A stretch of 64,000 bases of DNA from Phallusia mammillata (GCA_965637545.1 OZ281498.1:21948001-22012000); one strand, 5' to 3'; shown: positions 381 through 48,993, counted from the stretch's first letter. Notes: generated by a model from the letters alone, not told the origin. A program made the numbers and translations.

Positions 381-474
381 ATGTCGGTTAATAACAGCTG
401 TGACGATAGCAAATTTTCAGGAAATACTTCAGTCAACAGCACCACGGGAAATGTTTATGAGTATAAATCATCAG
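381..474 (+). CDS. First coding exon carrying repeat type R1 (MSVNNSCDDSKFSGNTSVNSTTGNVYEYKSS, phase-1 donor)
   Basis: ATG at 381 and CAG|GTAAAA donor at 475. Peptide and upstream sequence (ttaggtagaaat...aaagatgtcg) are homologous to the exon at 2632 and to first exons at 27589, 33719, 44089 and 47786. Confidence 0.6.
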
Positions 475-1168
475 GTAAAATTTTTAGTCCAGGGAATGTT
501 TAAAGCGAGGCGTGCCAATCCACTTGTTATATGTATGTGGGAATTGCTTCGCGTGCCACTATTTTTCTGAGCAATAGTGATATCAGTAATAAACAGGAAG
601 CAGGCAGATGTGTACGTGTAGGCATCAGTGTATTGATTCCATTTAAGTAAGGCGAAATATATTTATTTAAAACTGGTAAGCTTCAATGACATAATGTTTT
701 TCATAATCTTGAATCAACAAGTAAGGCTCATTATAGTTTTCATCCACCAAGTAACGAGCTATAGGAGATTCTAGTTTTGAGATGCAGGTACCAGTATTTA
801 ATTTATCGCTTTTAAATTTAAAGTTTTAAAAGTGTTTGAATGATTTGTACATAACTTAACAGTTTGTGGATATAGTTATGTAGTTTTATAAATCGTTATG
901 TTTTTGGTGGTTTTGAAAATAAACAAATTAGTCAGTTGCTAGCTTAACGAACAGACTATTGTATTTTGTGCGTTACACATTAACCAGAAAGCCAAATTTA
1001 TTACAGTAAATACAGTATAGTTCAATAACGGTAGGTTGTAATTAGTTTGTCGACTAACTACAACGCATTGATGACGTTCAGTGTTGTTTATTGTACATAC
1101 TTGTAAAAGAAAGTTGTTCTATTTAGTATCAACCACTTTGCAGTAAAATTTGTCAATATTGGTTGCAG

Positions 1169-1672
1169 AACAACCCAAGGTGTTAAAAGATTTTTTTGTC
1201 ATCACAATGGCGGAAGTAGCACTTGCCGCAAATGTATTTGAAATAGACTTGCAAGTTTTGTATATCTCTCTCAGCGGCCCAGCGGCTGTTTTCGCGACAA
1301 GTGCCTCTTTTGGGATCGCTGGTTATGTTACTTACAAAGTGGTCAACACTAAGCAATATATGAGAGCAATACTGCAACCGTTTCAAGATCTTCCCGGTGT
1401 TATTCGAGCCTGGAGAGGGGGGAGCCTTGTGATAGAAGTTGTGGCTGAAAATGATAAAGTGGCAAAACAGATAAGGGAGAGCTGTAGGTCGGGAAAAATT
1501 TTGAGGGAAATCAACAAAAATCTTAAAGAGTACAAAAATAAATTCAAAGAAGATGCAGGCCATTTTGAAAAGGGAGCCATCGTTAAGTAAGAAAAGCTGA
1601 CAATGCCTTCGCAAGAAGAATGGGCCAAAGCCAAAATCCAATATCAGGTCAAAATCGAGAGAATCATGAAAA
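1169..1672 (+). CDS. TRADD-N-like domain exon, copy 1 (hydrophobic helix + GSLVIEV...SGKIL), with in-frame TAA at 1588-1590
   Basis: Acceptor ttgcag|1169 is phase-compatible with exon 381-474; own ATG at 1207. Clear paralogue of 8516-8987. Homology continues past the TAA (EKLTMPSQEEWAKAKIQY) to an AA|GTAAGT donor at 1673. Pattern GSLxIxV...SGxL resembles invertebrate TRADD-like N-terminal domains (recalled, not searched). Confidence 0.6.
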
Positions 1673-2631
1673 GTAAGTCAAAAACATTATGGGTTTAGAA
1701 AGCTTGAATCGAATTATCACCATGAAACTTTTTGCTACGTTGAGGTCATCGGTATTTTTGTAGTTGTGCAATTTTATGGACTTGTGAGGCTGACTTGTAG
1801 TTTCAGAGTAGGCTTGTGTTTGCGCACAGCATGGCTTGCGGAATCGGTGCAAGTAAAATACACACAAAACACCCACTGTAACGCGTTGAAATGACGCCGT
1901 ATGGCAAAATAATGAAATCAAAAAATATTTTTGTCACTTATGTAAATCAAGACACTTTTTGCAATTGAAATAAAAGCTACATACTACGCATCCAACAACG
2001 CAGATTTCAGACATTTCTCCTGATTTGAAAAACTTTCTTTCTCTGCACTCAATTAAGCATTTTTTATTGGGACGAATATTCTTTAACTATCGTCTTGCAA
2101 ACAAACCGTTCGTTTGTTTTTGGCGTGGGAAGCCTTATTTGACAGTTTGAGTACGTGACTAATGAGTTTGCTGTAAGTGCAAAACACCTGAGGTTGACCC
2201 GCATTTATTTGCATTAAGTTCACTGCCTGTCTGAACTATAAACCTTTTTTAAAAGAGCAGTTATCGGTTCCGCTTTTTACTTCAGGGCGCACGTGGGCCC
2301 CAGCGAACGAGTAAACACTTTTTTCAACAGTAAACACACGCCCCCTTAAAACACATTAGATGCAAATTTTGTTTTACAACAACAGTGCCATAATCGTTTA
2401 TTGAACTTTGGACAATAGCTTAACCTTTTTTGCGCCACTAATTCAACACCTATTTACACCCCTGAACATATAGGCCTGCAACTGCATAAAAATCACCTGG
2501 TGCGGCTTTACAGTAAAAAAGAAGTTTGGTATTGTTTAGTTAAAAACGAACGATTCTTTTGTTCTGAAGTTTTTGCGTGACGATATTAAGAATAAAGGCT
2601 TCTTAGGTAGAAATTGCCAAGGTTTTAAAGG

Positions 2632-2713
2632 ATGTCGTTTAACAACAACCTCCAGGCCAGAATTTCAGGAAATAGCATCAACAGCAATAACCGGTATGTG
2701 TATGAAGCAACAG
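2632..2713 (+). CDS. Upstream R1 exon of gene A (MSFNNNLQARISGNSINSNNRYVYEAT); alternative first exon or uORF
   Basis: ATG at 2632, CAG|GTAAAG donor at 2714, phase 1. Flanks homologous to 250-474. Confidence 0.55.
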
Positions 2714-2870: not shown

Positions 2871-5151
2871 ATGCCTGGCGGTGTACACTTGAATATGAGT
2901 AACAATAAGTTTGATGGCAAAACCAATATTAATTCGGCTGATGGCGACATGAATGTGTATCAAGGACAAGGTGTGTTTCTTCAGGGTACTTGTTGGTAAA
3001 ATGATCTCAAAATAACGCGTGTTATCGCGCAAAACGACCCAACACCATTCTTACAAAGGAAAACCTTTTGTTTGTTTTGTGTTGCAGTGGATCAAAGCCA
3101 CCACGGAGACAGTTATACAATGCCACACGCAAACGTTACAGGAGGACACATTGGTCCACATCATGGTAACGGTAAGATGTCTTCGAGCCGTTTTTCATCC
3201 AAATGTTTACGTGTACATTGCAAGGCACAGTAGCAGTCCTTATTTTTTCTACGCTTGCACTTTTAATATAATTGTTGGGTGTGTTTGCTGGTAACAAATA
3301 ATGAGATATGGAAACTGCACTCCACTAAAACAAAAATTAAGCACGTTTGGAAACCAGCATGCAGCGACACGCTTTTTTAAGAAATATTACTTTAAACGAA
3401 TTTTTAATGTACTGTTTAACTATTTTTATTGCAGTGGATCGTCACGTGGGCAACATAACAATGCCACACGCAAACATTGGTGGATCCGTTGTATCCCATG
3501 GAGATACCAACATTGGACGCCGTAAGTGGTCGAAGCAAAAAAAATGTCTAGGTGTCAACGAAAAATTTGACCCACTTTTATTCTATGCAGAGGACGAGAG
3601 TCGACATAAACAGAACATCCAAATGAGAGACACACAAGTGTCTGGTGGCTCTTTGGTTGGAGTACAAGGCTCAGTAAACATCACAAGGGGTAAACTTGGA
3701 GGTTCGAGTATTATTGGTGTGGTGAAAAACACATCCTCAAGAAAAAACAGTCTTCGGTTTTCTTCAAATCCACAACAAAATCTTGGACATTAAAAAAACT
3801 CGACTATGATGTTCTCTCCTGGCTTGCCACATCCCTAACATTTGTTTATGTGCCTAGGTCAAGCACCAGCAAGCGCTGTTCATGACGATCAATCCACTAA
3901 ACGTTCATCGAGTTTAGCGGCAACAAAAGAGGAAGCATACATAAGGCAAGAAAAAGTATAGCCTAATATCTTTTGCATGTGTATACGCATGTTTGTGTTA
4001 ACCATCTGTAAAATTTAATCTAGTTCACCGGCAGCAGCAGGGAGCCCAAACGGAAAGTAAGTTCACAATATCTATTTATACTGCTTTATCCACTAACAAC
4101 GAAAGGATGTGTTAAGGTGTGATTGTAAACACTGCCCCGGAGGAGAAACTGAAGGTGTGTGTTGCAATGACGACGTGAACGCTCTAAAGATGATGAAAAA
4201 ATCTGCTTGGGACTGCATTGTTCAGCATCCTGCATTTGAACCCAATTGCCTTAATCCATACGTGCTTACCAACAGATACAAACGAGAGGCATCCACTGCT
4301 GGTCTTTCCCAGGCAGGGTGAGTACATGTGTTCGATATTCTACCACATTATATATAAATGGTTGCTATCCTTTTTTGGTCTGCAGTGTATATATAGGTAA
4401 ACTTCAAGCAATGCAAAAACTTAAGGCGCGTGAGCTTAACCAAGGCTTTTCGTCAGTGCTTGTCTAGCAGCATGGTCAAAGAGGGTAAATTGACGTTAAG
4501 CTTTCTTAGCTAAAAAGAAGTTAATTGCAGACAGTGTTCACTATTTCGACATATAATGCCTTTTAGTGCTGCTGGTAACAAAGAAATTGGCCGTACTGGT
4601 TGGTATAGCCACTTGTTATATTTATATGTGATACTTGGTCAGTTTGGTTTTAAGCATCTGATTGGCCATTGTGAATCTAGTTCCACCACGGTTTACACCC
4701 AGTTGTGACACAAATAATATGTGGTAAGGCACAGTATTTATTATGTGAGTCCAACAAACTGGAGTACCGTAGTCTGGCTATACTAGCCTGCTGCATGGCT
4801 AATGTCTGCCACCGTCTGCACTGACATGATAAGTCGAAACCGTTTATGTATCGGCATACTGCTTTACAAAAATTAACTTTTTAAGCACATGCATCAGCAC
4901 ATTAGAGTGTTATAGGCGTTTCGGTAGGGTAGGGGCAAAAAGGTTGAAAAACGCCGTTTATAAATTGCATTGAGGTAAATTTTTAGAAAACGAGTCCTGT
5001 TTTTTTACGCAGGAAATTTAAACTCACTGCTCGTAAAGAATACTTGGAGTGGGTGAAGTCGGATAAGGTGCCGTCGTGTGTCCAGAAAGCGATCGACGAG
5101 AAATTTCCGGATTCGTTCGGTCGAGATGGTTCCCAACCAACACTGGAATAA
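2871..5151 (+). CDS. Gene A: R1 + 3x R2 repeats + linker + P2X7 C-terminal (ballast)-like Cys/Zn domain, ~276 aa
   Basis: Exons 2871-2970, 3088-3171, 3435-3521, 3591-3689, 3858-3945 (GC donor), 4024-4056, 4117-4317, 5013-5151 join in one frame. C-terminus CDCKHC...VCC...CIVQHPAF...CL...EYLEW...VPSCV...EKFPD follows the P2RX7 tail pattern (CxCxxC...CC...CI...LPSC...FP). Confidence 0.75.
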
Positions 5152-6039: not shown

Positions 6040-6128
6040 GACCTCTAAAAAACTGCTTACTTTAATCGTTAACAGCAATGGATTTCGTGTGTGGGGCGGT
6101 TGTAAGTTGCTTTATTTGAGCAGCAAGC

Positions 6129-8515: not shown

Positions 8516-11500
8516 ATGACAGGCGTAGTTCCACTTCAGCTGGGCGCAAATTCTTTTAAAATAGATTTGCACGTTTTAAATATCTCCCTTAATGGCCCAG
8601 CGGCGGTTTTTGCGACAACTGCCACTTTTGGAGTTGGGAGCTATGTTGTCTATAAACTGGTAAACAGCGAGCAGTATATGAGAGCAATACTTCAACCTTT
8701 TCAAGATCTTGCTGGTGTTATTCGAGCGTGGAGAGATGGAAGCCTTGTTATAGAAGTTGTTGCTGAAAATGATGAAGTGTCAAATCGAATTAAGGAGGTT
8801 TGCCTGTCGGGGGAAATTTTGAGGGAAATCAACAAACGTCTTGAAAAGTATGAAGAAGAATATAAAGAAGATGTTGGTCGTTTTGATAAGCTTGATATCA
8901 TTACGGAAGAAACGCTTGCGATGTCGTTGGACAAATGGGCCAAAACAAAAGCCCAATATCAGATTACCATAAAAAAAATAATACAAAGTAAGTCAAAAAA
9001 ATGGTTGACAAATGTATACCTTTATGTTTTCTTTAATAAACAACCGAAAAATACATTTCATTTGGCCCAATAATAAAGCCACATTATTCAAATTCAAAAA
9101 ATAGCTTCAAGTGTGTCTCATCACAAGTCTTTTGACTGATTTTTACCAATGATGTCTTAGTTAATACAAATATACTGTTACCTTTTCGATACACAATTGT
9201 TTGAAAACCCATTTGTTTCTGCTTGAAGGAACAATTATGTTGTTTAAAGACAGGGGCCCTTTTAAAATTAGGCAATAAACATTTTTCCACGGAAAATGAT
9301 GAAGGTGGTTATTCATTACATAGGAAGTATAAATATAAATTACCAACATTTTAGGATCCATTTCTTGTGTGAACATAAGAACTGGTAGCAATGTGTTGCC
9401 AATGTTTGTATTTTTGCCAAACTTAAATCTAAAACCAAATTTGTATCCTCCCATTGATCCAGATTTTACAAAACAGACAAATTTTTAGCTGTACATGGGA
9501 AACATTAAAAATATGTTTATAAATTTTTTTTCTTGTGTAGAAATATCAGAAATAGGTAAGGGTCATCCAAACATGCCACCCACTCATTCACCTAAGTCAT
9601 CTTTGCTTGGGGTAAGTCTTATCACATTACTTTCACTTTAAAGTTCTTGGAAACCAATTGTTCTTTGCTTTTAAGTTTGCTTTAAACCAACTGTAGTAAA
9701 TATTGTATTCTGGATTGGTTTTATGGCAAGATTGCTGTCAATTGGTGTACTTAAGCAGTTAGGCTTAGTGGTGGTATAAAATAATAAAGAGTAAATTACA
9801 TATACCACTTTATTGTAGATTGATTAATTTGTTTTAATAATTTTAAATTTTATCAAGCAGATTGGCAAGCCAGAAGATTCACAAAGGCCGCCAAAGTCGG
9901 TCAATCAACCACAATGGTACGAACAAAAAGACTTGAACATAAAAGAGGATTCACCCGAGAGGTCAGTTTTCAAACTTGCAAAGATATACTGTTGCCCTCA
10001 TTTTCGTATGGTTTAATGGTTGCTTTGTTTATAGGCAACCGACACAGCCCCAAGGTATGTATCGCTATTTAATGGCCTTTTGAGGTACAGTCAAACTTCG
10101 ATACTGTGCCACCCTTTGGGACCGAAAGAAAGTGGCATAGTAGCGAGGGTGGCATAATAGCGAAGGTCGGTTGTAAAAATAGCCTTGTGACGTGACAATG
10201 TACTGTAATGCCACGTTGTGTTGTACGATTGCAATTTATTACAGTATACAGTATAAGGTACAGTATGCAGTATAATTTATTACAAAAAACGGATAGATCG
10301 TGCATAGAACAAACAGGATTTGTTAGTTTTGTCGTGACACAAGCACGGAACGGCGTTTGCATAACTCGCTGAAAAGCTGTGAAACCTCTTAACATGACCA
10401 CGTTTGTTTACTCAACGATTTGTTTTTCATGTTTTCTCTGTTTTATCATGAGTTCAAACCGAAAATTGTCAATTTTCAATCCGGAACCAGACCGTTAATA
10501 CAGTAATACTGTACTCTCATGTGTCATAGTATCAAGGGTAAGGGGTGGCATAGTAAATATATTTTCTATTGAATTTAGTTGGTGACGATCAAAAGTGGTA
10601 TAGTATCAAGGTGGCATAGTATCGAAGTTTGACTGTATATTTAAAAAACTTTGGTCAGTGCTGCCCTACAACAATAATCCATCCTCTCTAAATTAGCGAT
10701 TTTAACCAGGGAGTCGAACCAGAACTGAACCCGAACCCGCGAATTTCGATTTTCTACAAACACAAACCGGAGTTAAACCGCTTATTTTGCTTAGCGTTGG
10801 ACCCGAACCGGAACCGAACCAGTAAAAAATGCATTTTGTTTTATATTTTGCGATTTTTTTCAAAACAGTGCATGGAAGAATGCACCAGATAACACTTATA
10901 GGGCGTGTCAAAAATAAAACAGTGCACGGGCAAAAGGCTTTTGGAGTTTGATAAGGCCAGTTAGATGATGGGTAGAATTAAATTAAAACGAATAAAAATT
11001 TGAACCGGTTTAAAAACCGCAAACCGGTTCTGATCGGATAATTTGCCCAAACCGAAACAAAACCCGAACCCGAAAATATACATTTTTGAAAACCGAACCC
11101 GAACCCGAACCCTTAAAAACAAAACCAAGTGAACCCGAACCGAACCTGAACCCATATGACAAGCGGTTCGACTCCCTGATTTTAACACAATCTGCCTTTT
11201 TTACGTATGTGGCGTTTTTCCATATTATTTACTGTATTTCGAACAGACAAAATGATTCACGTGATAGACGCAAAGTTTTCTAACGGTGCCCATGGTCGGC
11301 AATATCAAACTTTGACCACAGTGTAAAACTCATTTCTGTACATGTGGTTATGTTGAAGGCGCAGTAGGTCCCTCTTACATCCAGTCCACATTTCGGAAGT
11401 TAAAAGTGTCAACGGAGGTTAAAAGCATTGACAGTGGATATGGGGAGTCATCCTCGTGCGATACCAGTCCACAAACATGCATCTTTCGCTCTGGAAGCAA

Positions 11501-23425: not shown

Positions 23426-25744
23426 GTTTAAAGGCTTGATTTTCTTTGTACAAAAACACAACTGTTTACATGTTTTGGTGAAGAAATGTCATTTTTTCCT
23501 GGGTTCACATACCAAAAATTGGTATGATTTTAAAGGTGGCTTTCCTATATATTTCCATTCTCTATGTGCTATATGCCATTTACTGATGTATATACTATGT
23601 ACACCATTGACCTACAAACATGATTGTTTTGTCGGCAAAAACGAATTGGTCCCCACACACCTGTTTCTGCAAATTAGTTACAGTGCAAAGATGGTGCAAT
23701 AATTTTTAGATTCTTAAAGGCGAATTAGTAGAAAGCATCAGCCCAAACTTTAAAAGGTTTTGTTCATAATGTTTTTCCATTATTATACTAATACCATATA
23801 ATAAAAAGTGGTAAAAGTAGAGTAGTAAAACGAAAGGTAAAAAAAACACTTCCAATCATCAGAGAATTTAACATCTAGCTTTGCTCTCGATATTGCTGTC
23901 TAAGGCTTGTTTTAAAACTGTTAAAAATTCTCCCAGAAAACCCACCACAAACACTAAAAAATTAGGCAGTGATTTTGCAGCAAAGTTATATACATTAAAT
24001 TCATTACTCAAGTATTGTTGCTCAAGTGTATTTGTTCAAAATAAAGAAAGCTACATTGCGACAAAAGAAGTTTTCAACCATGTTTTGTCGTACCTAAAAG
24101 TTGACTTTCAGTAACTCCGCTCATGCTAAGACACCTTATAGCAGGGTTGTCATACAACCTTTAAAATTTTTTCTGCAGCCCGCGAAGTAACTTTCAAAAA
24201 TGTTAAGTCTTAGGCGGAATACCTTGTCAGGCCTCTCATGGTTTTAATACGATGATCGAAATAACCCATCTTTAGAATCAGCAATGGCGATTGTTGCGTC
24301 ATTGTATGCCATTGTTTTCACACAAAACCATATAGCACAGTTGGTTCTTTTACTCTTCTATATGTTTGATATTTAAAACAATATTTTTTTAATGTAGTTA
24401 ATGGCATTAATGAACATTTTACTTTTTAATCATGCAATGTTTTTTGTTGTGATGTTACACTTTAACAAATTTTTCGATAGTGCAGCCCTCCACTTACTAA
24501 AAAGTTTACTAAAAAAACTTTGTAACTATGTCAAGCAGAGACCACCTACCCTGCAATGATTAAATGGATTTATCTTTTGTTTATAGGTGCATGAACCAGA
24601 ATCATAGCAAAGCATTTGATCAGGGTGGAATTATGGATTTTACAAGTGAATTTCAAAGCTGGGTAAAAGTGTACAAATGGAAAACACAAGTTTAAACCAT
24701 TCAAACAACACAAGAATAAATTGGTAAGCATGTAGTTGATTTATAGCATTGCTGTTTTTTTGCAAGCAGAAATATATTGTTCCCCACACAAGCTATGCAG
24801 AGGCCAATGTCTTCCTGCTGGCAAACTGTTTTGTTGTTTAACATTAGAAAAAACAGGCAGCCTAATCAATGTGGGAAAGGTACTTATGTATTTATACATA
24901 CAGTATATTTTGTAATTGTATGCTCTAAAACAGTAACTACGGTAATTGCATTGTTGCTAAGAGCACTGTTTACCAACCTTTTTTTGGTGAAACCCAACTA
25001 CATCTAAACAAATCTGTGGTTTTTATGCCCCATGGGTATATACATTATTACTACTTCAGTTGTATTTTGGTCTGTGAAAGAGAAAATCTTTCGAGAAATT
25101 TTGTTTTATTGGAAATTACTACGCCAGGTATGGAAATAATTAGATATCAAACATTTATTATGTTTTTTTTTCTACATTTAGCCAGAACTTTGGAGCGGGT
25201 TTTATGCATTATCAGCCAGACTACACTAAACAGTTAGCCGACAAATAACGTATTACCTAACGTTTCACAAGCAAGATCGACTATAATTATGGGTCCCCTT
25301 CCCTGAAGGGGACACATCTTGATTTCACTCTGTTTTTTTCTTTTTTTTGTCTTTTTTCTGCCGAAGCATTTCCAGGCACTTTTGGAATGAAATCTTTGGT
25401 GGATTTGGATGAAACTTTCACAGATGGTAGATATAGTTATGTAGATGTGCCATCTGCTTCGTTTGAGTTAATAACCCCAGTATTTACCCCGCTAGCCCCC
25501 AAAATGTAAAACGTTTTTGCAGGTTGCTGCGCACCACAACCGAAAAAATTCTGCGGAGTAACAGTATAGTAAAGGTACCAGAGAATATGCTACTTGTGTT
25601 TGTGCAATACTTGGAAGGCATTTTTGCATATGCCAGTGAGAGGGGTGTTAACAGTCTTATGATGTCAGACGTGTTAACAAATGTTGATCCTCTAGTGGCC
25701 AGAAATTTCATATTTTTTACTTATGGGTGTAGAACCCCATTAGT

Positions 25745-27588: not shown

Positions 27589-27682
27589 ATGTCTGTTAAG
27601 AGCAACTTTCAACATTGTCGTTTTACTGGAGAAAACTCGTTTAACAGCAGTCAACGAGATATCAATATCTACAGAGCTCCAG
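27589..27682 (+). CDS. Upstream R1 exon of gene B (MSVKSNFQHCRFTGENSFNSSQRDINIYRAP); alternative first exon or uORF
   Basis: ATG at 27589, CAG|GTAGCG donor, phase 1; peptide aligns with the other R1 exons. Confidence 0.6.
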
Positions 27683-28059: not shown

Positions 28060-30026
28060 ATGTCCAAACGTGTTGGAATAGAAATGACTAACTGTCAATT
28101 ATCAGACAATGTAACTTTCAACTCGAGCGAACGTGACATGAGCATCTACAACGGCCCAGGTGTGTTAAAAAACACAACGTTACCAAAACTGTACTGTTCT
28201 ACTTGGTAACCCAGCTGGCAAACTCAACAGCAAACGAAAAGTTAATGTTTGATATTTTTCACACAGTTGATCAGAGCAAACACGAACAGCACATCGACGC
28301 GAGCAACGCCAAGATATCAGGAAACTCAGTTGTGGGTGCAAAATCCGTCACAGTTACTAATTGTAAGTTCGCTTAAATTCATAACTTAATGGTATAGGAC
28401 ATAGGTACACCCTCTTGAATTTGTCAACAAAAAATTAATTCTCCTAAATTTGTCAGCGATGTTTTTCTGTAGGTTGGATAAACGTTTTAACATTCCAACG
28501 AAAACAAAAATTCGAACATGCAAAATCAAATGCTTGAATTGGTACACGTCTCGCAAGTTCGTTGCGCGTGCATGATATTGTCGGGAAGTGTGTGTGTGTG
28601 AATTTATGTTTTTTCCTGACTTGCACGTGACTCATTTCGCGCCCTTTACCACCACTTGAAAGTGTGACGTCATTTCCTGCCCTGCTGTGAACATTTTGAT
28701 CCAGGTTTTCGGGAATAATATATTTTATTTTTTAGTCGGAGGTGTGATTAAGTGTAAAACAATAAATAAAACGAGAATCGATTACGAAAATAGACCCTAA
28801 ATGCCACTTTATTCTTGCTAATCTAAAAAAATACATTCACCCCACTTTAAATGGGCCACAGCAAAAGTGCTAACTGAAACAAACCTTTATTTTATGTGTG
28901 ACCACAGCTACTAATCAAGTATACTTGTGGCAAACTTTCTTCAATTTATGCATTTAGAGACACTTTTAGATGCAAATTACAATCATGATAAAACTATCAC
29001 AGCATGCAATTTTTTTCCAGATGTTACCCATATGGGTGCATATTGCTTTGCGCTAACATTCCTTTGTGTGTAGATGCTGCACCGCCGCCAGCACCAACTA
29101 ATCCACCAGCACAGGCTCCACAAACCTCGCCCCCTGCTGCAGCAACGCCACAGACCGAACCACAGCAAAACCCGTGAGAAAAGTTTGGAAAAGTTTACCA
29201 ACATAGTGTTTTTTAACCCTTAAAGGTCGCAGGCTGCATCGTTTGTTTAATTTTTGTCGTCGGTGGGCAACTGTGCCCACAAAGAGTCCGCTGTAGAGCT
29301 GCCTATAATTGTTCCAGGTCCGTTGAATCATTTTTATGTGATGTTTTTGGACACAAAAGTTGGTGACCTCAATTTAGTTTAACCCATCGAGTTCCACTGG
29401 GTTGGAGCAATGCTGCTCAAGAAAACACAAGTGGCACAGACTGGAAACAACTCGTAAACACAAGGCGGTTGCGCTAACAATCCGGCCTTCTTGGCGACTA
29501 CTATTTCAGTAGAATAACCAAAACAAATCTCCAAAACTCATTAACGACTTTTTAAACTTTCACGAATACGTTACTGTTGTTTAGATGTGACTGTGGAAAA
29601 TGTCCGGATGAAAATGTCGGCAACCGTGTGTGTTGTCGAACCGACGCTATGGTATGGAGAAAAATGAGCACCTTTCCCATTACCACGTGCATTAGGGAGC
29701 ACCCAGCCTTCAATGCATGTTGTTTGGATAAATATATGCTTGAAAAGAATTACAATCGAAACAAACGACGCTTCCCGAATGCAATTCCTGGAGGACTTTC
29801 CCAACCAAAGTAGGTGTTATTAAAATGGAGAAAAACCTCTCATTCGTGATTTTGTTCTATATTGCACAGGAAATACAAGCGAACAGCAGAAGGCGAGTAC
29901 TTGGATTGGTTAAACCCAGATAACCAGAACAGAGATGCTACACTGCCATCCTGTGTCAAAGAGGCTTTTGATGTGAAATTTCCCGATTCAACTGTCCGTG
30001 ATGCCTCTTGGCCTGTGCTACAGTGA
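28060..30026 (+). CDS. Gene B: R1 + R2 + Pro/Ala/Gln linker + P2X7 C-terminal (ballast)-like domain, ~225 aa
   Basis: Exons 28060-28159, 28267-28362, 29074-29173, 29585-29809, 29870-30026 join in frame (an extra small phase-2 exon is possible). CDCGKC...VCC...CIREHPAF...CL...EYLDW...LPSCVKEAFDVKFPD; same intron positions as gene A. Confidence 0.75.
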
Positions 30027-30207: not shown

Positions 30208-30301
30208 GCTTTCTACATTGCCATATTGTGCCAAAGAGGCTTTTGATGAGAAATTTCCACATGCAATTGTTATAATGATGCCTCGGCCTGCGCTGCAGTA
30301 G
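30208..30301 (+). CDS. Partial duplicate of the gene B last exon; possible alternative terminal exon
   Basis: Acceptor ttgaaaacag|, phase-2 frame open: LSTLPYCAKEAFDEKFPHAIVIMMPRPALQ*, homologous to TLPSCVKEAFDVKFPD...WPVLQ*. Confidence 0.4.
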
Positions 30302-33300: not shown

Positions 33301-33718
33301 TACTCTACCAGTCTGTGCTGTTTGCGCTTCCAATCCCCTTTTTTTGCAAGGTCTTGTGAATGCACGTGCTAGGTTTTCAGGTTATCAAATCTTGTTTTTT
33401 AGATTTAATGCACATTTGCAGTGAAAATCTGACATAATCTTTTATGTGACGTTTAATCTAAGTTATAGGCATGTGGTTTAGCTGCTACGTCATGAAATTT
33501 ACCAGGGGATTCACCTAGGAAAAAACTGAAAATAGCCTCTTGCTGTACGGTTACCAGCAGTTACTGGCAAACTAGCCTTAGGCTTTTCAAGTTTGATTGA
33601 GGCAAAGGTCAAAATGTAATGGGTGTATTCTTATATGGTAGTTGTTTGTAACCTTTTTATTTGTTTTTTTAGCCATAGATTGTTTTGTAACTGAGATAAC
33701 TTCCTGTTTTGTCTCATT

Positions 33719-34257
33719 ATGTCTGGTGCTAAGAACGCTTTCAATGGATGCACATTTGGGAACGACACCAAGATTTTTCAAAATGAAGGCGACGTACACA
33801 ACTATAACGGCGAAAAGGCTCAAAGTAAATCAGTGTTTAAGTTATATTATTGCTTCAGTAGTCAGCACTAGACTCGGACTTAAATTAGTGACTAAATAAA
33901 AAAAATCACCGTGGAAGCTTACGTCGTAAAGACATATGATTGTCAAACGTTTGCAATAAATGTATTTTTACATTGTTGGTAATGTATTTAATCGAGCTTG
34001 GCTTCAAATTGAGTGTAACTTCTATAAAGGTAGTCCAGTAATTTGAGTTGTAGTTGCCGAGCGATTTGGCTATCAGCCACCAATTGTTTCCTCTACTGTT
34101 TTGTGATTGCCAAATCACGTTAATTTTTTGTCGTGTAACTTTGCACTTTGTTGCACCACAGTTGACAAGAGCGAACACAAACAGGTGATTGATATGAGGG
34201 ACTCAAATGTTGAAAACTCAGTGCTTGGTGTCCAAGGGAATGTAAACATGAATGTTG
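33719..34257 (+). CDS. Gene C: R1 + R2 microprotein; last exon unresolved
   Basis: Exon 33719-33824 (MSGAKNAFNGCTFGNDTKIFQNEGDVHNYNGEKAQ) and exon 34162-34257 (IDKSEHKQVIDMRDSNVENSVLGVQGNVNMNV), both with phase-1 GT donors. Possible ends: read-through stop at ~34266, acceptor at 34293, or exon 35949-36163. Confidence 0.7.
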
Positions 34258-34587
34258 GTAAGTTATAGTGCTGACGTTTCTCACTCCTTTTAGGTCCTAT
34301 CAAATTTTTGCCTCTGATTTTGTAACCGATTTTGCTCAGTCACTGTTAGTAGCTACTGTTTCCATATGATAGATACTGTTATTGCATACTGACTTGGATT
34401 TTTAGCCTAGTCTATTAAAATGGTGATATAGATACGTAAATACTGTTATAAATTTGTAGATTCGACGGAAAAGAAAGGATAAACAGACTACGGTATTGAC
34501 AAGCTGTACAGTGTAGCCTACATAGCCTACTGCCTTATTCACTGTACAACAATTCCTTCGGCATTCGTCAAAGGTGGCGCCCAATCA

Positions 34588-34731
34588 TGTGCCAAAACAC
34601 TCTTTTCTACTTGTGCCAAAACACTCTTTTCTACTTGTGCCAAAACACTCTTTTCTACTTGTGCCAAAACACTCTTTTCTACTTGTGCCAAAACACTCTT
34701 TTCTACTTGTGCCAAAACACTCTTTTCTACT
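34588..34731. repeat. Minisatellite, 6 perfect copies of 24-bp TGTGCCAAAACACTCTTTTCTACT
   Basis: Head-to-tail identical units with no spacers. Confidence 0.95.
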
Positions 34732-36978
34732 TACTTGTTTTATTATCTACGGCCAAATTTGTTATGAATGACCAAATTAGGCCATTTTGGCGATTTTAGG
34801 TTTTTATAAATTCATATATGCACGTTTTTACAAACAAATTTCCATCTTAGTTTCTTCAGCGAGAACAATCATTCAAAAAAATCTGCCTTAATTTCACTTT
34901 GCCTCATTTTGAATCGAATAAAAAGAGATCAAGCCTCCTGTGTCGATGTGAACTTAAACACCGCCATTCATTCGAAACGAGCGGTTTTCAATCACTTTTG
35001 TCATGTCGTTCTGTGGATATTTAAAACCTTCGTGACTTTAATCAATCAAGAATACATCTTTGCGTAGACGTTTTAACAACCGATTCTGTCATATCAGGTC
35101 TTCAAGTGAGCTTGAACAAGTGTTCATGTAGGCACTACGGAAAAAAGATATTCAAGACGCGTGGCGTAAAGTCACAGAAAGCACACGGACCGGATCTAGG
35201 GGTCAGGTATTGAACTAATGCAAAGATATGGACTCTTTGGCGACGTTGGCCTATTGAATGTAAGAGTTTTAAGCTCAACGTCGACACAGCGTCCATGCCT
35301 TTGCGTTTGTTCAACACCTGACTCTTATAACCGGTTCTTTTCTGCCTAATAGTGTGCTATCTAAGACGTTATCCACGCGTTTTGGGTTTCCTCTATTTCT
35401 GTAGTGCATATATTAACACTGTTACAAACTCAATTAATAACCTACACTAATGACATTCACAGCGATTGTTGAAACGTCTGTATTACGATGTATCTGAAAA
35501 TACAACCTCGTTGTCTGTTTTGTTTTTAATTATTCTACTTTTTAAGTCCGTCCGTGTATACTGTTCTCAAGTTTTGTGTGGCTTGCTTTGACAAGTACTG
35601 AAATTTAAATTTTTAGGATCAAAATCTGATCAAATGGTGCGTGTGATTGTAAATAAATTTGCAACATTGTTAACAAGACAAAAAAGAAAACGCCAAATGA
35701 GTTAACACTTTCTGAAATTTGAGACCTTCATTGCACACAAGCTGGCAAACATAATAATATATATAAGTGACTGTATGGTCGTCAGATTCGGCATGTTTAT
35801 ACAGGTAATACAGCTAATTGTAATACAGGGGTTTTTACCACTTTGCAAAAAAGTGAAGAATTTGCATAAGGTCACAAATACATTAAAATAAAATATGTGG
35901 TATTGACTTGGTGTTCATCTTAAGGCAGCTTTTCATTGCTGGTTGCAGACAGACCTACAACACGAGGGATAATAACATCCTGTGCTAAACCAAGCATTTC
36001 CTGGTTCCTAAAGTTCACGTTACAATGCTATTGGCTCACAGATGTTGGCATTTCTGGAATTTCTGTAACAACGAAAAGTCTTAAACTTTCACAATATCAG
36101 ATGTGTTCTATTTTTGAGAAAACTCTTTCGAGCAGTCGATTTCTAAACTCAGAAGCGGGCTAACCTGAATACTGATGGGTCGTCATATATAGTTCAGACT
36201 GTAAAAGATAAAAGCATTGCAATTACGCATGTCACTTTGTGTTAATCAAATAACGTGAACTAATTGGAGAAAACGTTTTTAAATGGCAATTTCGGAATAA
36301 GCGGTGTACTGAAAAGAAGCCTCGTTTATCTAATGGAATTATACATTCTGCATAAATTTAAATACTGCATGTAAAAACAGTACGGAATAGCACAAAACAC
36401 CACACTGTAGTGAAACACCAAACACCCTTTTGGTGGTGCAGGTACAACCAATTTTTTTTCAGTGTAGTGACACAGATTTAGGAATATATGGACTTGGTTT
36501 GGCATTTCTGATTGTTGTGTTGAACCAAATGGGGCAATACAAGTTGTTTTTTCAAGTACTTATGTTTGGGTTGTTTGTTTGGTGTAACCTAGTAGGTGGA
36601 TCTAAGTTATGCCTCGTTGAACGTGGCGTTCCGTTTTGTTACGCGTGAAGTGCAAAACACAAAGTCTATCTTGCACCGACCGAAGCCCAACGAATGTATG
36701 TCAGCAGAGTAGAAACCATAATGTTAGCAGATAAACTTGGCATAAAGTATGTAACCCATTGTGGTCAATGGGTACGTTTGCGTATTCTGACTTTGGTGCA
36801 TGTTAAGAGTAACCTACAGCGTTTTAAAATTGTTCTGTCATCTAATCTTTGTTTTTTCACTTAGCAGCTTGCTTAGACTTTTGTGTTGTAGCTGGCTTTT
36901 GTTTTTAGACTAGACTTTGCTAAAAACCGTTTTGGTATTCACATTGACCATTCGGTATCGGATAGTAGTTGAGACGCC

Positions 36979-44088: not shown

Positions 44089-45941
44089 ATGTCTGCTCAA
44101 AGCAACAATAACAGTGGAGATGTAAACTACTACAGTGCTGGGGTAATAAACGGTAAGAAAAAAACGCTTTGTACTCTTTACGTTCAAACCGATGCTTATA
44201 ATTTTTTTTTTTTTTCAGTACAGCTTGTAATTTGTAAATGTCCCGTAACAGAAAATGTCAATATACCTCTTAAATGTAAAGAAGAACTACTGGCCCCAAT
44301 GGTAAAGAACTATTCATTCACTGTTTTTAAATCGTGTCTTTCGGTGTTGTAACAGTGGTATTGTTGGTGCGGTTAAGTTTTTCGTTTTATTGGACACAAA
44401 TCAGAAGCCACAGTTCGAGCCAGGCCGACAACTTTATTAATTCTGACATAGTTAACTCCCGAAGAGACGAACAGCATGTAGACATGAGAAGCGCAACCCT
44501 TAACGATTCAGCAGCTGCAGTACAAGGAGATGTAAATCGCTCCAAACGTGAACGTGAACGTGATAAAAATGATGGTAACTGTTTCAAACAGATTTTTCTT
44601 GTATCTTGCGTATACTTATTACGTTTCAGACTTTGGACAACAATAATCGTATGTGCTTTGGTCACACTCCGGTTTATGCGCGACTATGGTTTTTAAGGTT
44701 ATATACATCATTACCAGCTCCCAGGGTACACTAAAACCCGCTATGAGCAACGTTAGACTAACATACTGTTACCACACACCAGTTCATGTTGTACAATGTA
44801 CAGCATACACTTTTTAACAAGCATAATATTAGAGGGGCATTTGTCCTGATTTTAATGTTTCCTTTCTTTGTGGGTTAATAATGGTGCAAGCGTTTGGCGT
44901 AGGGAACCAGTTTCTTTTCTGACCTGCACACAATTTAATGTGGTCAATCTTTAACCGATCTCTTTAACCTTTTTGAAACAAACACTGTGACAACGGATAC
45001 ACAAATAAAGACACGGGCATTGTGACTTTTTATTAGGGTTTTCTAAGTTTTATGACAAGGAACCAACCTAAGCAAACAGAACTTGTCTTGTGTGGGTCTG
45101 TGCCGTTTGGGTTAATGGCATGTCGTAATGATTTTAAACAACGCGGACCAAAGAAATCTGTTGCTGCAAGGCATGATGTTAAGTAATGCTTTTCCAGCAG
45201 TTTTTGTCATTAATAATTACCGACGTTTCGACGTCCCATACGAGACGCCTTTATCGGATAATGGCTTATTTTGAAAGACTAACTTCTAATAATGCTACAA
45301 AAGAAACAAAACACACACAAAAGCAGCATTCGTTTATGATATGTCATTACATCAAAATTCAACAAAACTTGGCTACACGCCATTAACGGGTGCTATTGGC
45401 CTTGCCTTTGCACTCCGGGCTGCGCCGTCGTTGTCTACTATTTGCGAACCTCTTGCCTAAAGGCTTCTCGATTATTTATTACATTAACTGCTGGAAGAGC
45501 AATACGCTTTTATTGTGGAATAAACTCGATTATTTTAAATTTGCAGAGCAGCACCCTTCTGACGATTTTAATCTGTACGACGAAAGTCCACGCTCAGTCC
45601 ACTATAGCGACAACGATTTTGGTGTTTCACCTTTTTTGTCCACGCCAGCATACATACCTGGTTTCAAAGCACCACCGAGAAGGGCAGTATTAGTGCATAG
45701 GCATGTTCCTGTTAGCACAAACCACTTTGGCTTAGCACACTCAAGGTCTTCTCAGCCCCCTATTGCTTTGCCCGCCCGGTCCCCGCCGCCAGGAGCAGGT
45801 TATAGATCTGGCGTTATGCACGCTCGACCTATTCCTGGTCGTCCAATGGCTCCTATGTATAGTTCACCGTCGCAACATTTTCACGGCGCTTCTCATGGAA
45901 GGATTAATCCCATGAGCGGAGGAGGTCATTTTCGGCGATAA
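44089..45941 (+). CDS. Gene F: internally deleted R1 + R2 + Pro/His/Gly/Ser-rich disordered tail, ~184 aa
   Basis: Exons 44089-44152 (MSAQSNNNSGDVNYYSAGVIN), 44452-44547 (alternative donor 44574) and 45547-45941, all phase 1. The join to the last exon is inferred from phase. Confidence 0.6.
45216..45262 (-). ncRNA. Degenerate Penelope-type hammerhead motif
   Basis: Minus strand ATTATC-CGATAAA-GGCGTC(loop)GACGTC-GAAACGTC-GGTAAT: stems I and II intact, catalytic core mutated. Confidence 0.5.
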
Positions 45942-46619
45942 AGATGACCACAGTGATATTTAAATATACAAAATGCAATATATTCATCACGTACAAACTG
46001 ACTGGTAATTTTTTCAAGCTACTGTTACGGTCGATGTCTTGCGTTATAAATGTTGTATGTATGTCGCATACAGTCACAATCAATAGTTGTTTTTTTATGG
46101 TTCATTTGGTAAACATGCTTTTTGTGTGTTTGGACTTTAAATATATTACTCAACTGTGACTCTGCTTTTGTTACCATTCAAAGAAATTGTCTTTTCAATC
46201 CAACGGCGCATAATTTTAATTAGAGTATAGCTGTTGTTGTATGAATCAGGGTCAAGAGGGAGCGGTTCCAGTTTACAAAATAGGGTTTATTAGGGCAATA
46301 CCACGTTAAATGTAATTTTGAAGGTCGTTGAGACCTAAGATAAAAAGTTTTGGGTTCAAGGCCTGATGTTGTGGTTGTACGTTTTTCCAAATAAAAAATC
46401 TAACAGGTGGATACGTAGATGTTCTGGAGAAATATTCCCTAACACGGGTGGTTAGATTCTAGGGCCCCCGCGACTGGTCTCACCATCGTTTCCCCCCCAG
46501 TCGTGTTATACTCTCTCTGCGCCACACTCACTTTCTTGTGAGCACCCGACACATAACGCCTTGTAATACGGTGTAGCTGCAGCGCGTTCAACTACTATCC
46601 ACCAATTGTGCCCGACACT

Positions 46620-46730
46620 TTTTTGTGCTTCATAACGTCTTAACGTTGCGCAGCTATTTCCAGCTTGGTGATTGTTTTTAGTGCAATTTTGTTGCTATGT
46701 TGTCTTTCACCAAGCGAAATAAACTCAACT
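46620..46730 (+). repeat. Dispersed repeat, also at ~63590-63702
   Basis: Shared CATAACGT.TTAACGTTGC.CAGCTATTTCC.GCTTGGTGATTGTT...TTTCACC.AGCGAAATAAACTCAACT; boundaries approximate. Confidence 0.65.
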
Positions 46731-47785
46731 TAACTCAAATACGACGTTATTTAACACAATTTTTTATGACCGCACGAGGTCGTACAAGCGCTAGTTGTGC
46801 AACCTCTTTAAAATGGGTTTTTACCACCCATACAAGCATATTTGTTAGTGGTGTTTAAGAGCAAAGACTTTGCGAGGACATCGACCATTGTGTTGTAAAA
46901 TATTGCGACTTAGGCACAGCAAACCTTACGCAACAAAGCGGAACAAAACTACAGTGAAAAGGGGGAACCGAAACTTTCACGCCGTAGTCGTTCTAGCTGC
47001 CAAGCCTTGTGATCAAGCAGATTAAAATTCAAAAATCACTATCAAAAACTAGGTTGTATGAATTTGCACAGTACATAAACAACTTATTAAGCAAAAATTA
47101 ACCCAAAAACGTAGCTGCTGTGGCATTAATTCCCTACAAAGCGAAAAAATATTAAGACAAAGGCCACGTTTGCAGGGAAGTTACGTGAAAAAAATCCCCG
47201 AATTCTTTCCCTGGTATTTTGCTTGGGTTGATTCTCTATTAAAATTACCTAGTGGTTGTTGGATGTAACACGAGAACATTTTGATACAGTGGCTTATCGC
47301 TAGCAACTTATGTAATGCAGCAAAAGCAAGGTTGCAAAAGATGATAAGTAAAAGTATTGCTTTTAATATTGCTTGGTACGAACAAAACTGGCAATAAAGT
47401 AGCTAAAAGAGGTTGCTTTTTTTACTTGAATATTTTAAATAAACTATTGCTGTGATCAGTTTACTGTTTTTACGTATTAGTTAACTACGATTTACACTAC
47501 TTTTTTGAAATGCAGATTAAGTAAGGCATAATAATTGACTACCGTCTTTTGCTACTTCAATTTGCTGTTAGTAAAAGAACTAACTTTGTCACCAAAACTT
47601 ATGCTACAATAATCTTCGCTCTTTTATCATTACAAACAGGCAGAAATAAATTCTGATTTCAGATAAAAACGTTATAGCAGTCAGTTTCATTTTGAAGTTT
47701 TTTTTTATGATTTCTTTATCGCAGATTTAAGTTAGGCAAAATAACTTTTTTTAGTTGTACAAAAAAACAACTAAAAATCGAAATA

Positions 47786-48993
47786 ATGTCAGTTTCAAAC
47801 ACCTATAACGGTTGCAAGTTTGATGGAAAAACTCAAATATACTCAAACAGTGGGGATGTGAACAATTACAATGCACCAACTGTAAAAGGTGAGAGACAGT
47901 TGATTGCTTGTTAAGTACATAAGCATTTGATCTAAATTTGTTTTTTATTTGATATTTTAGTTGATAAAAGCAAACATGAACAACACATTGATATGAGAGG
48001 CGCTCGTATAAGCGGCTCAATAGTTGGTGTACAAGGAAACGTCAATATTGGCAAAGGTAAGGAACAAACGTTTTGATCTCACCGATCATTTTCGAAATAA
48101 ACAAGAATTTTGTAAATTGTATTTATTTGTTACTGTCAGCACAGAGTTTCTTAACCGGGAGTAAATTAAACCTAAAAAAGTAAATTTGACATGCTTTAGT
48201 CCAGTGGTGCTCAACCAGGGCCCATGACCCCCAGGGGCGTTCCGGGGGGGCACACTTGAAGGGGGCCACAAGGCCAAAAAATTACTTTTAGGGGGTCACG
48301 CTCCACGAAAGGGTGAGAACCACTGCTTTAATCGTTCATTTTATTAAGCCCAAAGAAATTTGCGTATGTATGATTAGTGAGGGAAATTTCATTTTCAAAA
48401 TCTTCTCAGGTGTAAACGGGAGAAAATTGATTAAAAATTTCCAATTGCCATAAAATCGACATGCATAATGGCTTTTAAAGCCTCAATTCTTTATTATTTG
48501 AATACAATTTTTAGGGTTAAATTTCAAACACGTTCAACTGAATCATATATTTGTCCTAAAAGTGCAATTTTCCCCATATTAAACAGTACCAGTCAATGAT
48601 AAAACAAAGGCTAGTTATGTACGTTCCGTTCCGGGAAATACCCCCGTAGTTGGTACCCGTAAATATTTAAATGTTACAGTTCCTCCTCTGCGTTTCAATT
48701 CCTCTTGCGAAATCAGTCAAACGTTTACAAGGGGCAGTAAAACTTTATAAGCTATTGGAGGGCTATAAGAGAAAACTCATCAGCTGGAATGGAATACAGC
48801 GACAAACCCGTCAAATAAATATGTTATTGTTTGTGTCTGTTAAAAGGGGGCATTTATATATCTCTTGTTTGTTCATGGGCAGTACAGATAACAACGTTAC
48901 AATAAACTTGTAAAAGAGTCGGACAAGATTATTATTTTAATTTAAAGCTCATGGTCCAATTTATATTTTTCAGGTGAAAATGGAAAATACTGA
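47786..48993 (+). CDS. Gene E: R1 + R2 microprotein, ~72 aa (MSVSNTYNGCKFDGKTQIYSNSGDVNNYNAPTVKVDKSKHEQHIDMRGARISGSIVGVQGNVNIGKGENGKY)
   Basis: Exons 47786-47888, 47961-48056 with strong GTGAG/GTAAG donors; last exon 48974-48993 (alternative acceptor at 48410). Confidence 0.7.
48202..48325. mobile_element. Short hAT MITE in gene E intron
   Basis: TIR CAGTGGTGCTCAACC / GGTGAGAACCACTG; TSD CTTTAGTC/CTTTAATC (7/8). Confidence 0.85.

What the first reader, a model, noticed from the sequence alone, without database searches (positions are those of the whole stretch)
381..48993. Candidate undescribed system: exon-shuffled amyloid/beta-solenoid-like repeat modules shared by at least six genes with different C-terminal domains
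Seen in sequence: eight R1 exons (381, 2632, 2871, 27589, 28060, 33719, 44089, 47786; rough consensus MS..N.F.gc.F.G.t.i.s..GDvn.Y) and seven R2 exons (3088, 3435, 3591, 28267, 34162, 44452, 47961; consensus vD.S.H.q.idM..a.i.gs.vgvqG.vni). Every exon ends in a phase-1 donor and the R2 exons are symmetric (84-99 nt, four exactly 96 nt). The module is always N-terminal and is followed by a P2X7-tail-like domain (A, B), a disordered tail (F), nothing (C, E) or possibly a TRADD-N-like domain (381). Established: short N/G/V/I-rich pseudo-repeats with alternating hydrophobic residues mediate templated amyloid signalling in RHIM proteins (RIPK1/3) and fungal HET-s/NLR systems. Inference: R1/R2 form a two-rung beta-solenoid that lets these proteins co-polymerise as an immune or cell-death signalosome. 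GVQG-[NS]-VNI resembles but does not match the RHIM (I/V)Q(I/V/L)G core. No receptor, kinase or pore-former is visible in the window.
Basis: partly seen in the sequence, partly recalled or inferred. Interest (0 to 1): 0.9.

Follow-up and report, generated by a model that had tools for sequence, protein, structure and literature searches.

The report
Sea-squirt mini-exon N-terminal motif family
A sea squirt (Phallusia mammillata) carries a 48-kb row of genes that share two short, protein-level-conserved starter exons found in no known family; the exons look real, but their joining is not yet seen in RNA and the idea that they form signalling amyloid is untested.

Summary
The observation largely holds. 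All 15 exon-like modules (8 R1, 7 R2) lie at the stated coordinates on the + strand. Each keeps one open frame and ends in a phase-1 GT donor. All R2 exons have an AG acceptor and run phase 1 to phase 1. Leave-one-out HMMs recover 6 of 8 R1 and at least 4 of 7 R2 independently. Synonymous sites are saturated and introns are at random identity, while protein similarity persists, so the modules behave as old coding exons under constraint.

RNA contigs from 4 runs in 4 studies prove that R2 exon 28267-28362 is spliced to a linker exon and two exons of a P2X7-ballast-type (ZCD) domain. In all four, R2 is joined upstream to a non-coding exon ending at 24723, not to either R1. The public protein model (105 aa) also starts downstream. 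No R1-to-R2 junction is therefore confirmed.

No Pfam family and no homologue in 1.84 billion proteins matched. The RHIM/PP/BASS3 signature is absent. Only the ZCD tail (genes A and B) has support; "TRADD-N-like" has none.

The amyloid signalosome remains speculation. One untested lead is that other notes on this genome report NLR-type genes headed by short motif exons without a partner.

The parts
381..474 (+). R1 exon (start exon type a). Its partner is unknown: it may be an orphan or an alternative first exon.
   Evidence: ATG with A at -3 and donor CAG|GTAAAA in phase 1. Leave-one-out E 9e-4.
2632..2713 (+). R1 exon, a weak member. It is 67% nt-identical to the R1 at 381 and shares upstream sequence with it.
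   Evidence: Leave-one-out E=11, so not significant alone.
2871..2970 (+). R1 exon (type b) of gene A.
   Evidence: Donor AAG|GTGTGT in phase 1. Leave-one-out E 5.5e-7.
3088..3171 (+). R2 exon, His-rich variant, gene A.
   Evidence: Acceptor TTGCAG| and donor ACG|GTAAGA, 84 nt, phase 1-1. Leave-one-out E 0.19.
3435..3521 (+). R2 exon, His-rich variant, gene A. It is a tandem duplicate of the exon at 3088.
   Evidence: 87 nt, phase 1-1. Closest to 3088 (59% nt).
3591..3689 (+). R2 exon, canonical (…VGVQGSVNI…), gene A.
   Evidence: 99 nt, phase 1-1. Alignment A1.
4117..4317 (+). Gene A, ZCD (P2X7-ballast-type) exon 1. The borders are approximate.
   Evidence: tblastn/tblastx to gene B. Contains CDCKHC and VCC…DCI clusters.
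5013..5151 (+). Gene A, ZCD exon 2, ending in a stop codon.
   Evidence: 48-58% identity to gene B. VPSC-x10-FP.
24589..24723 (+). Upstream exon that RNA contigs join to the R2 of gene B. It has stops in all three frames. The 5' border is inferred.
   Evidence: The loose-end 30-mer from 4 runs maps uniquely to 24693-24722, followed by G|GTAAGC.
27589..27682 (+). R1 exon (type a) of gene B. It is not covered by RNA contigs.
   Evidence: E 2e-9. Zero contig depth.
28060..28159 (+). R1 exon (type b) of gene B. It is not covered by RNA contigs.
   Evidence: E 3e-5. Zero contig depth.
28267..28362 (+). R2 exon of gene B, a degenerate motif (VVGAKSVTVTN). It is proven to be in spliced RNA.
   Evidence: Joint 28362|29074 GT..AG in 4 of 4 runs. 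The piece starts at 28266/7.
29074..29173 (+). Gene B, Pro-rich linker exon.
   Evidence: RNA joints in 3-4 runs. In frame with R2 and the ZCD.
29585..29809 (+). Gene B, ZCD exon 1.
   Evidence: RNA joints. 100% identical to UniProt A0A6F9DNZ1 'P2X purinoceptor 7-like', Phallusia mammillata. CDCGKC and VCCR clusters.
29870..30026 (+). Gene B, ZCD exon 2 coding part. The exon runs on as 3' UTR to at least 30557.
   Evidence: RNA. LPSC-x10-FP.
33719..33824 (+). R1 exon of gene C.
   Evidence: E 3.5e-5.
34162..34257 (+). R2 exon of gene C, canonical.
   Evidence: 96 nt, phase 1-1. Leave-one-out E 1.4e-10.
44089..44152 (+). Short R1 exon of gene F. Only the GDVNYY half is present; weak member.
   Evidence: Leave-one-out E 2.9.
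44452..44547 (+). R2 exon of gene F. The donor is ambiguous: 44547, 44553, 44559 and 44574 are all phase 1.
   Evidence: Leave-one-out E 2e-3.
47786..47888 (+). R1 exon of gene E, closest to the consensus.
   Evidence: E 7e-13.
47961..48056 (+). R2 exon of gene E, closest to the consensus.
   Evidence: 96 nt, phase 1-1. Leave-one-out E 1e-17.

Best explanation
R1 and R2 are genuine protein-coding mini-exons of an old, lineage-restricted tandem gene family in the ascidian Phallusia mammillata.

R1 is a translation-start exon: ATG, then an Asn/Ser/Gly-rich strand-like stretch, …F.G.T.I.S..GDVN.Y. R2 is a phase 1-1 cassette exon (VD.S.H.Q.IDM…VGVQGNVNI) that can be duplicated in tandem, as it is three times in gene A.

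The family grew by whole-gene tandem duplication and intragenic exon duplication, not by shuffling between unrelated genes. In genes A and B the module precedes a Pro-rich linker and a Zn-cysteine 'ballast' domain (ZCD, of the nanor/P2X7-tail type). Genes C, E and F are short paralogues that keep only the module.

Inferred, not shown: the module is a short, uncharged-cored, beta-strand-prone tag. Through it the ZCD proteins and the module-only paralogues would associate with each other or with a partner carrying a like motif. Whether that association is amyloid-like templating is open.
For: - All 15 modules keep one open frame, canonical splice sites and phase 1, with a Val/Ile junction codon.
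- All 8 R1 ATGs are the first ATG after a stop, and 7 of 8 have A at -3.
- Most members are recovered by leave-one-out HMMs.
- dS is saturated with dN 0.35-0.6.
- Identity by codon position is 0.50/0.64/0.41 for R2 and 0.48/0.56/0.35 for R1, while flanking introns are at random level. No DNA-level duplication links the loci.
- The R2 of gene B is spliced in RNA from 4 studies, in frame with the linker and ZCD.
- About 88 codons upstream of the annotated Met of P0005 are open. They hold the first two Cys clusters conserved with gene A, so an upstream start exon is required.
- Genes A and B share the order R1a-R1b-R2…ZCD.
- ZCD proteins are known to have variable N-terminal parts without homologues (PMC7016195).
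Against: - No R1-R2 junction was seen. The only observed gene B isoform joins a stop-filled upstream exon to R2 and skips both R1 exons.
- The public protein model is the 105-aa downstream ORF.
- There is no expression evidence for genes A, C, E or F.
- No protein sharing three 5-residue words with gene E's R1 open frame was found among proteins of 37-117 aa.
- The R2 profile found no real homologue in 1.84 billion representatives.
- R1 2632, R1 44089 and R2 3088 are statistically weak.
- The interaction role is pure inference.
Confidence: 0.45

Rival explanations
1. One reading: R1 and R2 form a two-rung beta-solenoid or amyloid motif. It would let these proteins co-polymerise by templating as an immune or cell-death signalosome, as with RHIM, HET-s/NWD2 and BASS.
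For: - The uncharged, Gly/Asn/Val/Ile-rich C-terminal half of R2 (…ISGSIVGVQGNVNIG…) and R1 (…IYSNSGDVNNY…) is of the length and composition of known amyloid signalling motifs. GVQG is present in genes A, C and E.
- Module-only paralogues sit beside module-plus-domain paralogues in one cluster.
- Unverified notes on the same genome describe NLR, NB-ARC-TPR and ZU5 genes with short motif heads or tails and no partner, and ZCD modules fused to caspases.
Against: - The RHIM tetrad, G-phi-Q-phi-G and the PP pattern are absent from every module.
- No Pfam RHIM, HET-s, sigma or PP match.
- R1 versus R2 similarity is not significant.
- The lag-2 conservation periodicity is not significant.
- The N-terminal half of R2 is highly charged.
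- No receptor, kinase or pore-former lies in the window.
- R1-R2 joining is unproven.
- No biophysical or structural test was possible.
Confidence: 0.15
2. The exons are coding, but the module is only a flexible, fast-evolving N-terminal extension of nanor-like ZCD proteins with no assembly role. Genes C, E and F and the R1 at 381 would be partial gene duplicates without function.
For: - ZCD proteins generally carry variable N-terminal parts without homologues (PMC7016195).
- Only genes A and B have a verifiable downstream domain.
- No expression evidence exists for genes C, E or F.
- Gene B's R2 has lost the VQG core, and gene A's middle R2 exons are divergent His-rich variants.
Against: The module-only copies E and C are the best-conserved members: their leave-one-out E-values are the lowest and synonymous sites are saturated. 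That is not expected of decaying fragments. ATG, phase and splice sites are intact in all of them.
Confidence: 0.25
3. R1 exons are not used and R2 is a 5'-UTR exon. The apparent coding conservation would be a relic of an ancestral coding state.
For: In 4 runs from 4 studies R2 follows a stop-filled exon and both R1 exons have zero contig depth. The public model starts at a downstream Met.
Against: - The R2-linker-ZCD frame is open for about 88 codons upstream of that Met and contains conserved Zn-cysteine clusters.
- 15 of 15 modules have intact frames after synonymous saturation.
- Contigs cannot show absence of minor or tissue-specific isoforms (stated).
Confidence: 0.15

Closest known systems
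Stand-alone ZCD ('ballast') proteins: nanor/nanor-like, PANTHER PTHR36981, Pfam P2RX7_C
   Same: Genes A and B end in a domain with the CxCx2C, (V)CC…C-I and (L/V)PSC-x10-FP cysteine clusters, at the C-terminus, behind a variable N-terminal part (PMC7016195). Gene B's product is named 'P2X purinoceptor 7-like' in UniProt.
   Different: The Pfam HMM and PDB sequence searches do not detect the domain on single exons or on the truncated 105-aa model. Cluster 2 has longer spacing than the vertebrate consensus. The N-terminal part here is itself a conserved, duplicated exon module shared with genes that have no ZCD.
RHIM / cRHIM / fungal PP / bacterial BASS3 amyloid signalling motifs
   Same: A short (about 20-30 aa) Asn/Gly/Ser/Val/Ile-rich segment containing G-V-Q-G, at a protein terminus, in genes that look immune- or cell-death-related.
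   Different: The defining (V/I)-Q-(V/I/L/C)-G tetrad and the G-phi-Q-phi-G signature are absent. There is no Pfam match. No motif-sharing receptor is known, and no fibril evidence exists.
HET-s/HET-S prion-forming domain (HRAM) with NWD2
   Same: The idea of two successive short rungs (r1, r2) on the effector side.
   Different: R1 and R2 are not detectably homologous to each other. They are N-terminal rather than C-terminal, no adjacent NLR is present, and there is no sequence match.
Symmetric-phase (1-1) cassette exons that spread by exon duplication in metazoan genes
   Same: R2 is 1-1 symmetric, has been triplicated in tandem in gene A, and is present once in four other loci.
   Different: Classical 1-1 shuffled modules are folded extracellular domains. 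This one is a 28-33-aa cytosolic-looking peptide.

Membership tests
RHIM (Pfam RHIM; definition in PMC13506858) | Core tetrad (V/I)-Q-(V/I/L/C)-G within an 18-20-residue amyloidogenic segment | tested here: not met
   Regex on all spliced R1R2 modules gave no match. Only G-V-Q-G, with no hydrophobic residue after Q, occurs in genes A, C and E.
RHIM / PP / BASS3 superfamily (Dyrka et al., 10.1101/2020.01.06.895854) | Central G-phi-Q-phi-G signature | tested here: not met
   Absent from all modules.
Pfam amyloid-signalling families (RHIM, HET-s_218-289, Ses_B/PP, NACHT_sigma) | Profile HMM match | tested here: not met
   hmmscan of all 15 modules at E up to 10 gave no such family.
NLR-associated amyloid signalling motifs in general | The same motif on a receptor (NLR) and on an effector, usually encoded nearby | not testable with these tools
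   No NLR lies in the window. The rest of the genome could not be fetched. The R2 profile found no NLR in 1.84 billion representatives at E<=1e-3, but a 31-column profile is weak. R1 was not searched.
NLR-associated amyloid signalling motifs in general | Forms cross-beta fibrils or prion-like foci and cross-seeds | not testable with these tools
   This needs experiment.
ZCD / P2X7 ballast domain (PMC7016195) | Cys cluster 1: (PxW)CxCx2C | tested here: met
   CDCGKC in gene B and CDCKHC in gene A. The P-x-W prefix is absent.
ZCD / P2X7 ballast domain (PMC7016195) | Cys cluster 2: LCCRx3GxCITT(S/T) | tested here: inconclusive
   VCCR/VCCN are present and a later C-I is present, but 16-17 residues on instead of 5.
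ZCD / P2X7 ballast domain (PMC7016195) | Cys cluster 3: (L/I/V)PSC(C/S)x3IRx2(F/Y)P… | tested here: met
   LPSCVKEAFDVKFP in gene B and VPSCVQKAIDEKFP in gene A, with the same spacing. The trailing Y(S/T)G is absent.
ZCD / P2X7 ballast domain | Pfam P2RX7_C HMM or fold match to the P2X7 ballast | tested here: not met
   No Pfam hit on the exons or on P0005. No PDB sequence hit. The AF2 model was too poor to search (pLDDT 43). The full spliced domain could not be submitted because it has no reference.
TRADD-N domain (claimed for the ORF after the R1 at 381) | Pfam TRADD_N match or fold match | tested here: not met
   No Pfam hit at E<=0.1 for 1147-1587 or 8516-9070. The AF2 model had pLDDT 46. 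The paralogue at 8516 has its own ATG and no R1.

The most novel reading that the evidence does not exclude
R1/R2 is the effector-side copy of the short head or tail motifs that other (unverified) notes report on dozens of NLR, NB-ARC-TPR, TIR and ZU5-UPA genes of this same genome. Those genes lack death-fold domains. On this reading, sea squirts would run receptor-to-adaptor signalling through a new, non-RHIM templating motif, with ZCD proteins and motif-only microproteins as adaptors or regulators. This would be an animal counterpart of fungal and bacterial NLR amyloid signalling.
Probability: 0.1. Interest if true: 0.9.

Novelty: new variant of a known kind. Interest (0 to 1): 0.5.

Why it matters
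Stand-alone P2X7-ballast (ZCD) proteins occur across animals, but their function is unknown and their N-terminal parts are described as unrelated to one another. This window shows a ZCD subfamily whose N-terminal part is a conserved, duplicable exon module, and that module also exists on its own. That gives a handle on what such proteins bind.

If the module proves to be shared with the death-fold-less NLR-type receptors of the same genome, it would point to a so far undescribed signalling motif in the closest invertebrate relatives of vertebrates. If not, it is an ordinary lineage-specific gene family, with incomplete public gene models.

Tried and rejected
**Homology searches**
- The open frame around gene E's R1 found no candidate.
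- ORF 1147-1587 found no hit.
- Gene B's ZCD exon found only P0005.
- The R2 profile against 1.84 billion representatives gave four hits. Three are sums of weak repeats. One is a DUF4781 protein with a duplicated 20-bit match, which is chance level.
- The ESM Atlas gave nothing for R1 or R2 and only a weak P2RX7_C lead for the ZCD exon.

**Structure**
- AF2 of P0005 and of ORF 1207-1587 gave pLDDT 43 and 46, too poor for a fold search.

**Fetching transcripts**
- Exact-product look-ups of P0005 and of single-exon ORFs from the gene B transcript found nothing on record.
- P0005's cluster has a single member.

**Weak or negative statistics**
- The i,i+2 conservation periodicity was not significant.
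- tblastx between the downstream regions of C, E, F, A, B and 381 showed homology only between A and B.

**Left out**
So I ran no joined-module profile search, no fold of R1R2 and no Pfam scan of the full ZCD.
- Only the gene B region was laid, so genes A, C, E and F have no RNA test.

Full report
**Source and setting**

The window is eukaryotic (37% GC, no N runs). Gene B's ZCD exon is 100% identical to UniProt A0A6F9DNZ1 / CAB3264615.1, 'P2X purinoceptor 7-like' of Phallusia mammillata. The window is therefore from this ascidian or a very close relative. Flanking genes are ordinary: a CATIP_N exon at 56684-57838 (+) and Kelch exons at 62046-63999 (-).

**Check of the observation**

- Each R1 begins with an ATG that is the first in-frame ATG after a stop. 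Seven of eight have A at -3, against a background A frequency of about 0.31.
- Each R1 ends at a plausible GT donor in phase 1.
- Each R2 follows a pyrimidine tract and AG. It is read with two bases completing a split codon and ends at a GT donor in phase 1.
- R2 lengths are 84, 87, 99, 96, 96, 96 and 96 nt.
- For every adjacent R1/R2 pair the split codon is GTG/GTT (Val) or ATT (Ile).
- HMMs built from the modules find no further copy in the six-frame translation. All copies are on the + strand.

Leave-one-out HMMs show the family is not an artefact of picking.

- Six R1 are recovered independently, with E from 7e-13 to 9e-4.
- Four R2 are recovered independently, with E from 1e-17 to 2e-3.
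- R1 2632 (E=11), R1 44089 (E=2.9) and R2 3088 (E=0.19) are marginal alone.
- R2 3435 and 3591 sit in one open frame, so their test is confounded.

**Selection**

There is no DNA-level similarity between the loci. The only duplicated DNA in the first 9 kb is 1227-1687 versus 8545-9002.

- Pairwise dS is saturated or above 1, while dN is 0.35-0.6 among canonical members.
- Identity by codon position is 0.50/0.64/0.41 for R2 and 0.48/0.56/0.35 for R1.
- The 90 nt of intron on either side is at the random level of the aligner.

The copies are therefore old and have been kept at the protein level. The caveat is that the alignment is amino-acid-guided and the sample is small.

**RNA evidence**

The contigs came from four RNA-like runs in four studies and were laid on 27400-33399. 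They carry GT..AG joints at 28362|29074, 29173|29585 and 29809|29870. This proves that R2 28267-28362 is an exon with exactly the predicted borders. It is spliced in frame to a Pro-rich linker exon and two ZCD exons.

In all four runs, however, the sequence before R2 is not R1.

- The 30 loose letters map uniquely to 24693-24722, followed by G|GTAAGC.
- That exon has stops in all three frames. One is a TAA two codons before the junction in the R2 frame.
- Contig depth over both R1 exons of gene B is zero.
- The public protein model (P0005, 105 aa) begins at the first downstream Met, MVWRKM. So the deposited transcript model also lacks an upstream in-frame start.

The frame from that TAA to this Met is open for about 88 codons. 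It contains the CDCGKC and VCCR cysteine clusters that are conserved with gene A. The 105-aa model would lack those clusters, so a functional product needs an upstream start exon. R1a or R1b are the only conserved candidates.

I read the observed isoform as a non-productive or alternative-promoter form. This is inference. Contigs cannot exclude minor isoforms, and my one read-laying run is spent. Genes A, C, E and F have no RNA test.

**C-terminal parts**

Only genes A and B share downstream homology. Pfam and PDB sequence searches on the single exons and on P0005 find nothing, and the single-sequence AF2 model is useless.

The three cysteine clusters that define the ZCD in PMC7016195 are present as follows:

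- CxCx2C is met.
- (V)CC plus a later C-I is partly met, with longer spacing.
- (L/V)PSC-x10-FP is met, with the correct spacing.

Together with the UniProt name and a weak Atlas lead, I accept 'ZCD / P2X7-ballast-type' for A and B with moderate confidence. The same paper states that the ZCD is always C-terminal, behind variable N-terminal parts without homologues. This is the known frame into which A and B fit.

'TRADD-N-like' for the ORF after the R1 at 381 has no support. There is no Pfam hit and the AF2 model has pLDDT 46. That ORF and its paralogue at 8516 each have their own ATG, and the paralogue has no R1. The R1 at 381 may be an orphan or an alternative first exon. The tails of C, E and F are unverified.

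**Shuffling or duplication**

Genes A and B share the order R1a - R1b - R2 … ZCD, so they are whole-gene duplicates. The R2 exons at 3088 and 3435 are each other's closest relatives and share a His-rich TMPHAN variant, which indicates an intragenic tandem exon duplication made possible by the 1-1 phase. Nothing here demonstrates transfer of the module onto unrelated genes.

**Comparison with known motifs**

- No module matches any Pfam family, including RHIM, HET-s, Ses_B/PP and NACHT_sigma.
- The RHIM tetrad (PMC13506858), the G-phi-Q-phi-G signature of RHIM/PP/BASS3 (10.1101/2020.01.06.895854) and the PP pattern are absent. Only G-V-Q-G occurs, in genes A, C and E.
- R1 and R2 are not demonstrably related to each other (hhalign probability 15%).
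- The alternating conservation visible by eye is not significant with so few sequences.

**Search for relatives**

- The R2 profile against 1.84 billion representatives returned no true relative. A 31-column profile needs roughly 43 bits to pass, so only close relatives would have been seen.
- R1 and the joined module could not be searched.
- Word-based searches, the Atlas and a metagenome pattern scan gave nothing.

**Context from earlier notes (unverified AI notes)**

The same genome is reported to hold several families that bear on this finding:

- many NLR, NB-ARC-TPR, TIR and ZU5-UPA genes that carry short motif exons in place of death-fold domains;
- one case where an agent found 'no matching partner';
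- ZCD modules fused to caspases.

I could not fetch those sequences, so a link to R1/R2 is only a lead. It is the basis of the novel case, at probability about 0.1.

**Verdict**

This is a real, previously undescribed, protein-level-conserved pair of mini-exon modules in a tandem family of ZCD and module-only genes. It arose by duplication. The R1-R2 joining, the expression of most members and any amyloid behaviour all remain to be shown.

Noticed in passing
window 24589-24723 (+): This exon is joined to gene B's R2 in RNA contigs of four studies. It holds a 34-codon ORF (24591-24692) and has stops in all frames. At least 380 nt of further upstream transcript were not located. It may be a long 5' UTR from an upstream promoter, or the end of an upstream gene.
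   Followed up: partly
window 30200-30301 (+): A degenerate second copy of the last ZCD segment (LPYCAKEAFDEKFP…PALQ*) lies inside the transcribed 3' UTR of gene B. It is a duplicated terminal-exon relic.
   Followed up: partly
window 1227-1687 and 8545-9002 (+): The only DNA-level duplication in the first 9 kb (76% nt, 65% aa). The two ORFs have a hydrophobic N-terminal stretch and a conserved core (…ILQPFQDL.GVIRAWR.GSLVIEVVAEND…). There is no Pfam match and no database homologue of 81-257 aa.
   Followed up: partly
window 31565-32099 (-): RNA contigs on the minus strand have high word depth (up to 78) and non-canonical joints, with long loose ends. This looks like a repeat or a transcript from a related locus rather than a gene here.
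   Followed up: no
window 34483-34796 (+): A tandem repeat with a 24-nt unit, read as AKTLFSTC in one frame, lies just downstream of gene C.
   Followed up: no
window 25-50 nt upstream of most R1 ATGs (e.g. 2848, 28019, 33679, 44027): Pyrimidine-tract plus AG acceptor-like sites precede most R1 start codons. A shared TTAGG(T/C)(A/G)GAAAT lies before the R1 exons at 381, 2632 and 27589. These are possible spliced-leader or 5'-UTR-exon acceptors.
   Followed up: partly
window 56684-57838 (+); 62046-63999 (-): Ordinary neighbours: a CATIP_N domain exon (E 7e-78) and Kelch-repeat exons.
   Followed up: no
window 29973-29975: The window encodes Val where the public protein A0A6F9DNZ1 has Gly (FDVKFP versus FDGKFP). 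RNA contigs also show C>T at 29943. These are allelic differences.
   Followed up: no
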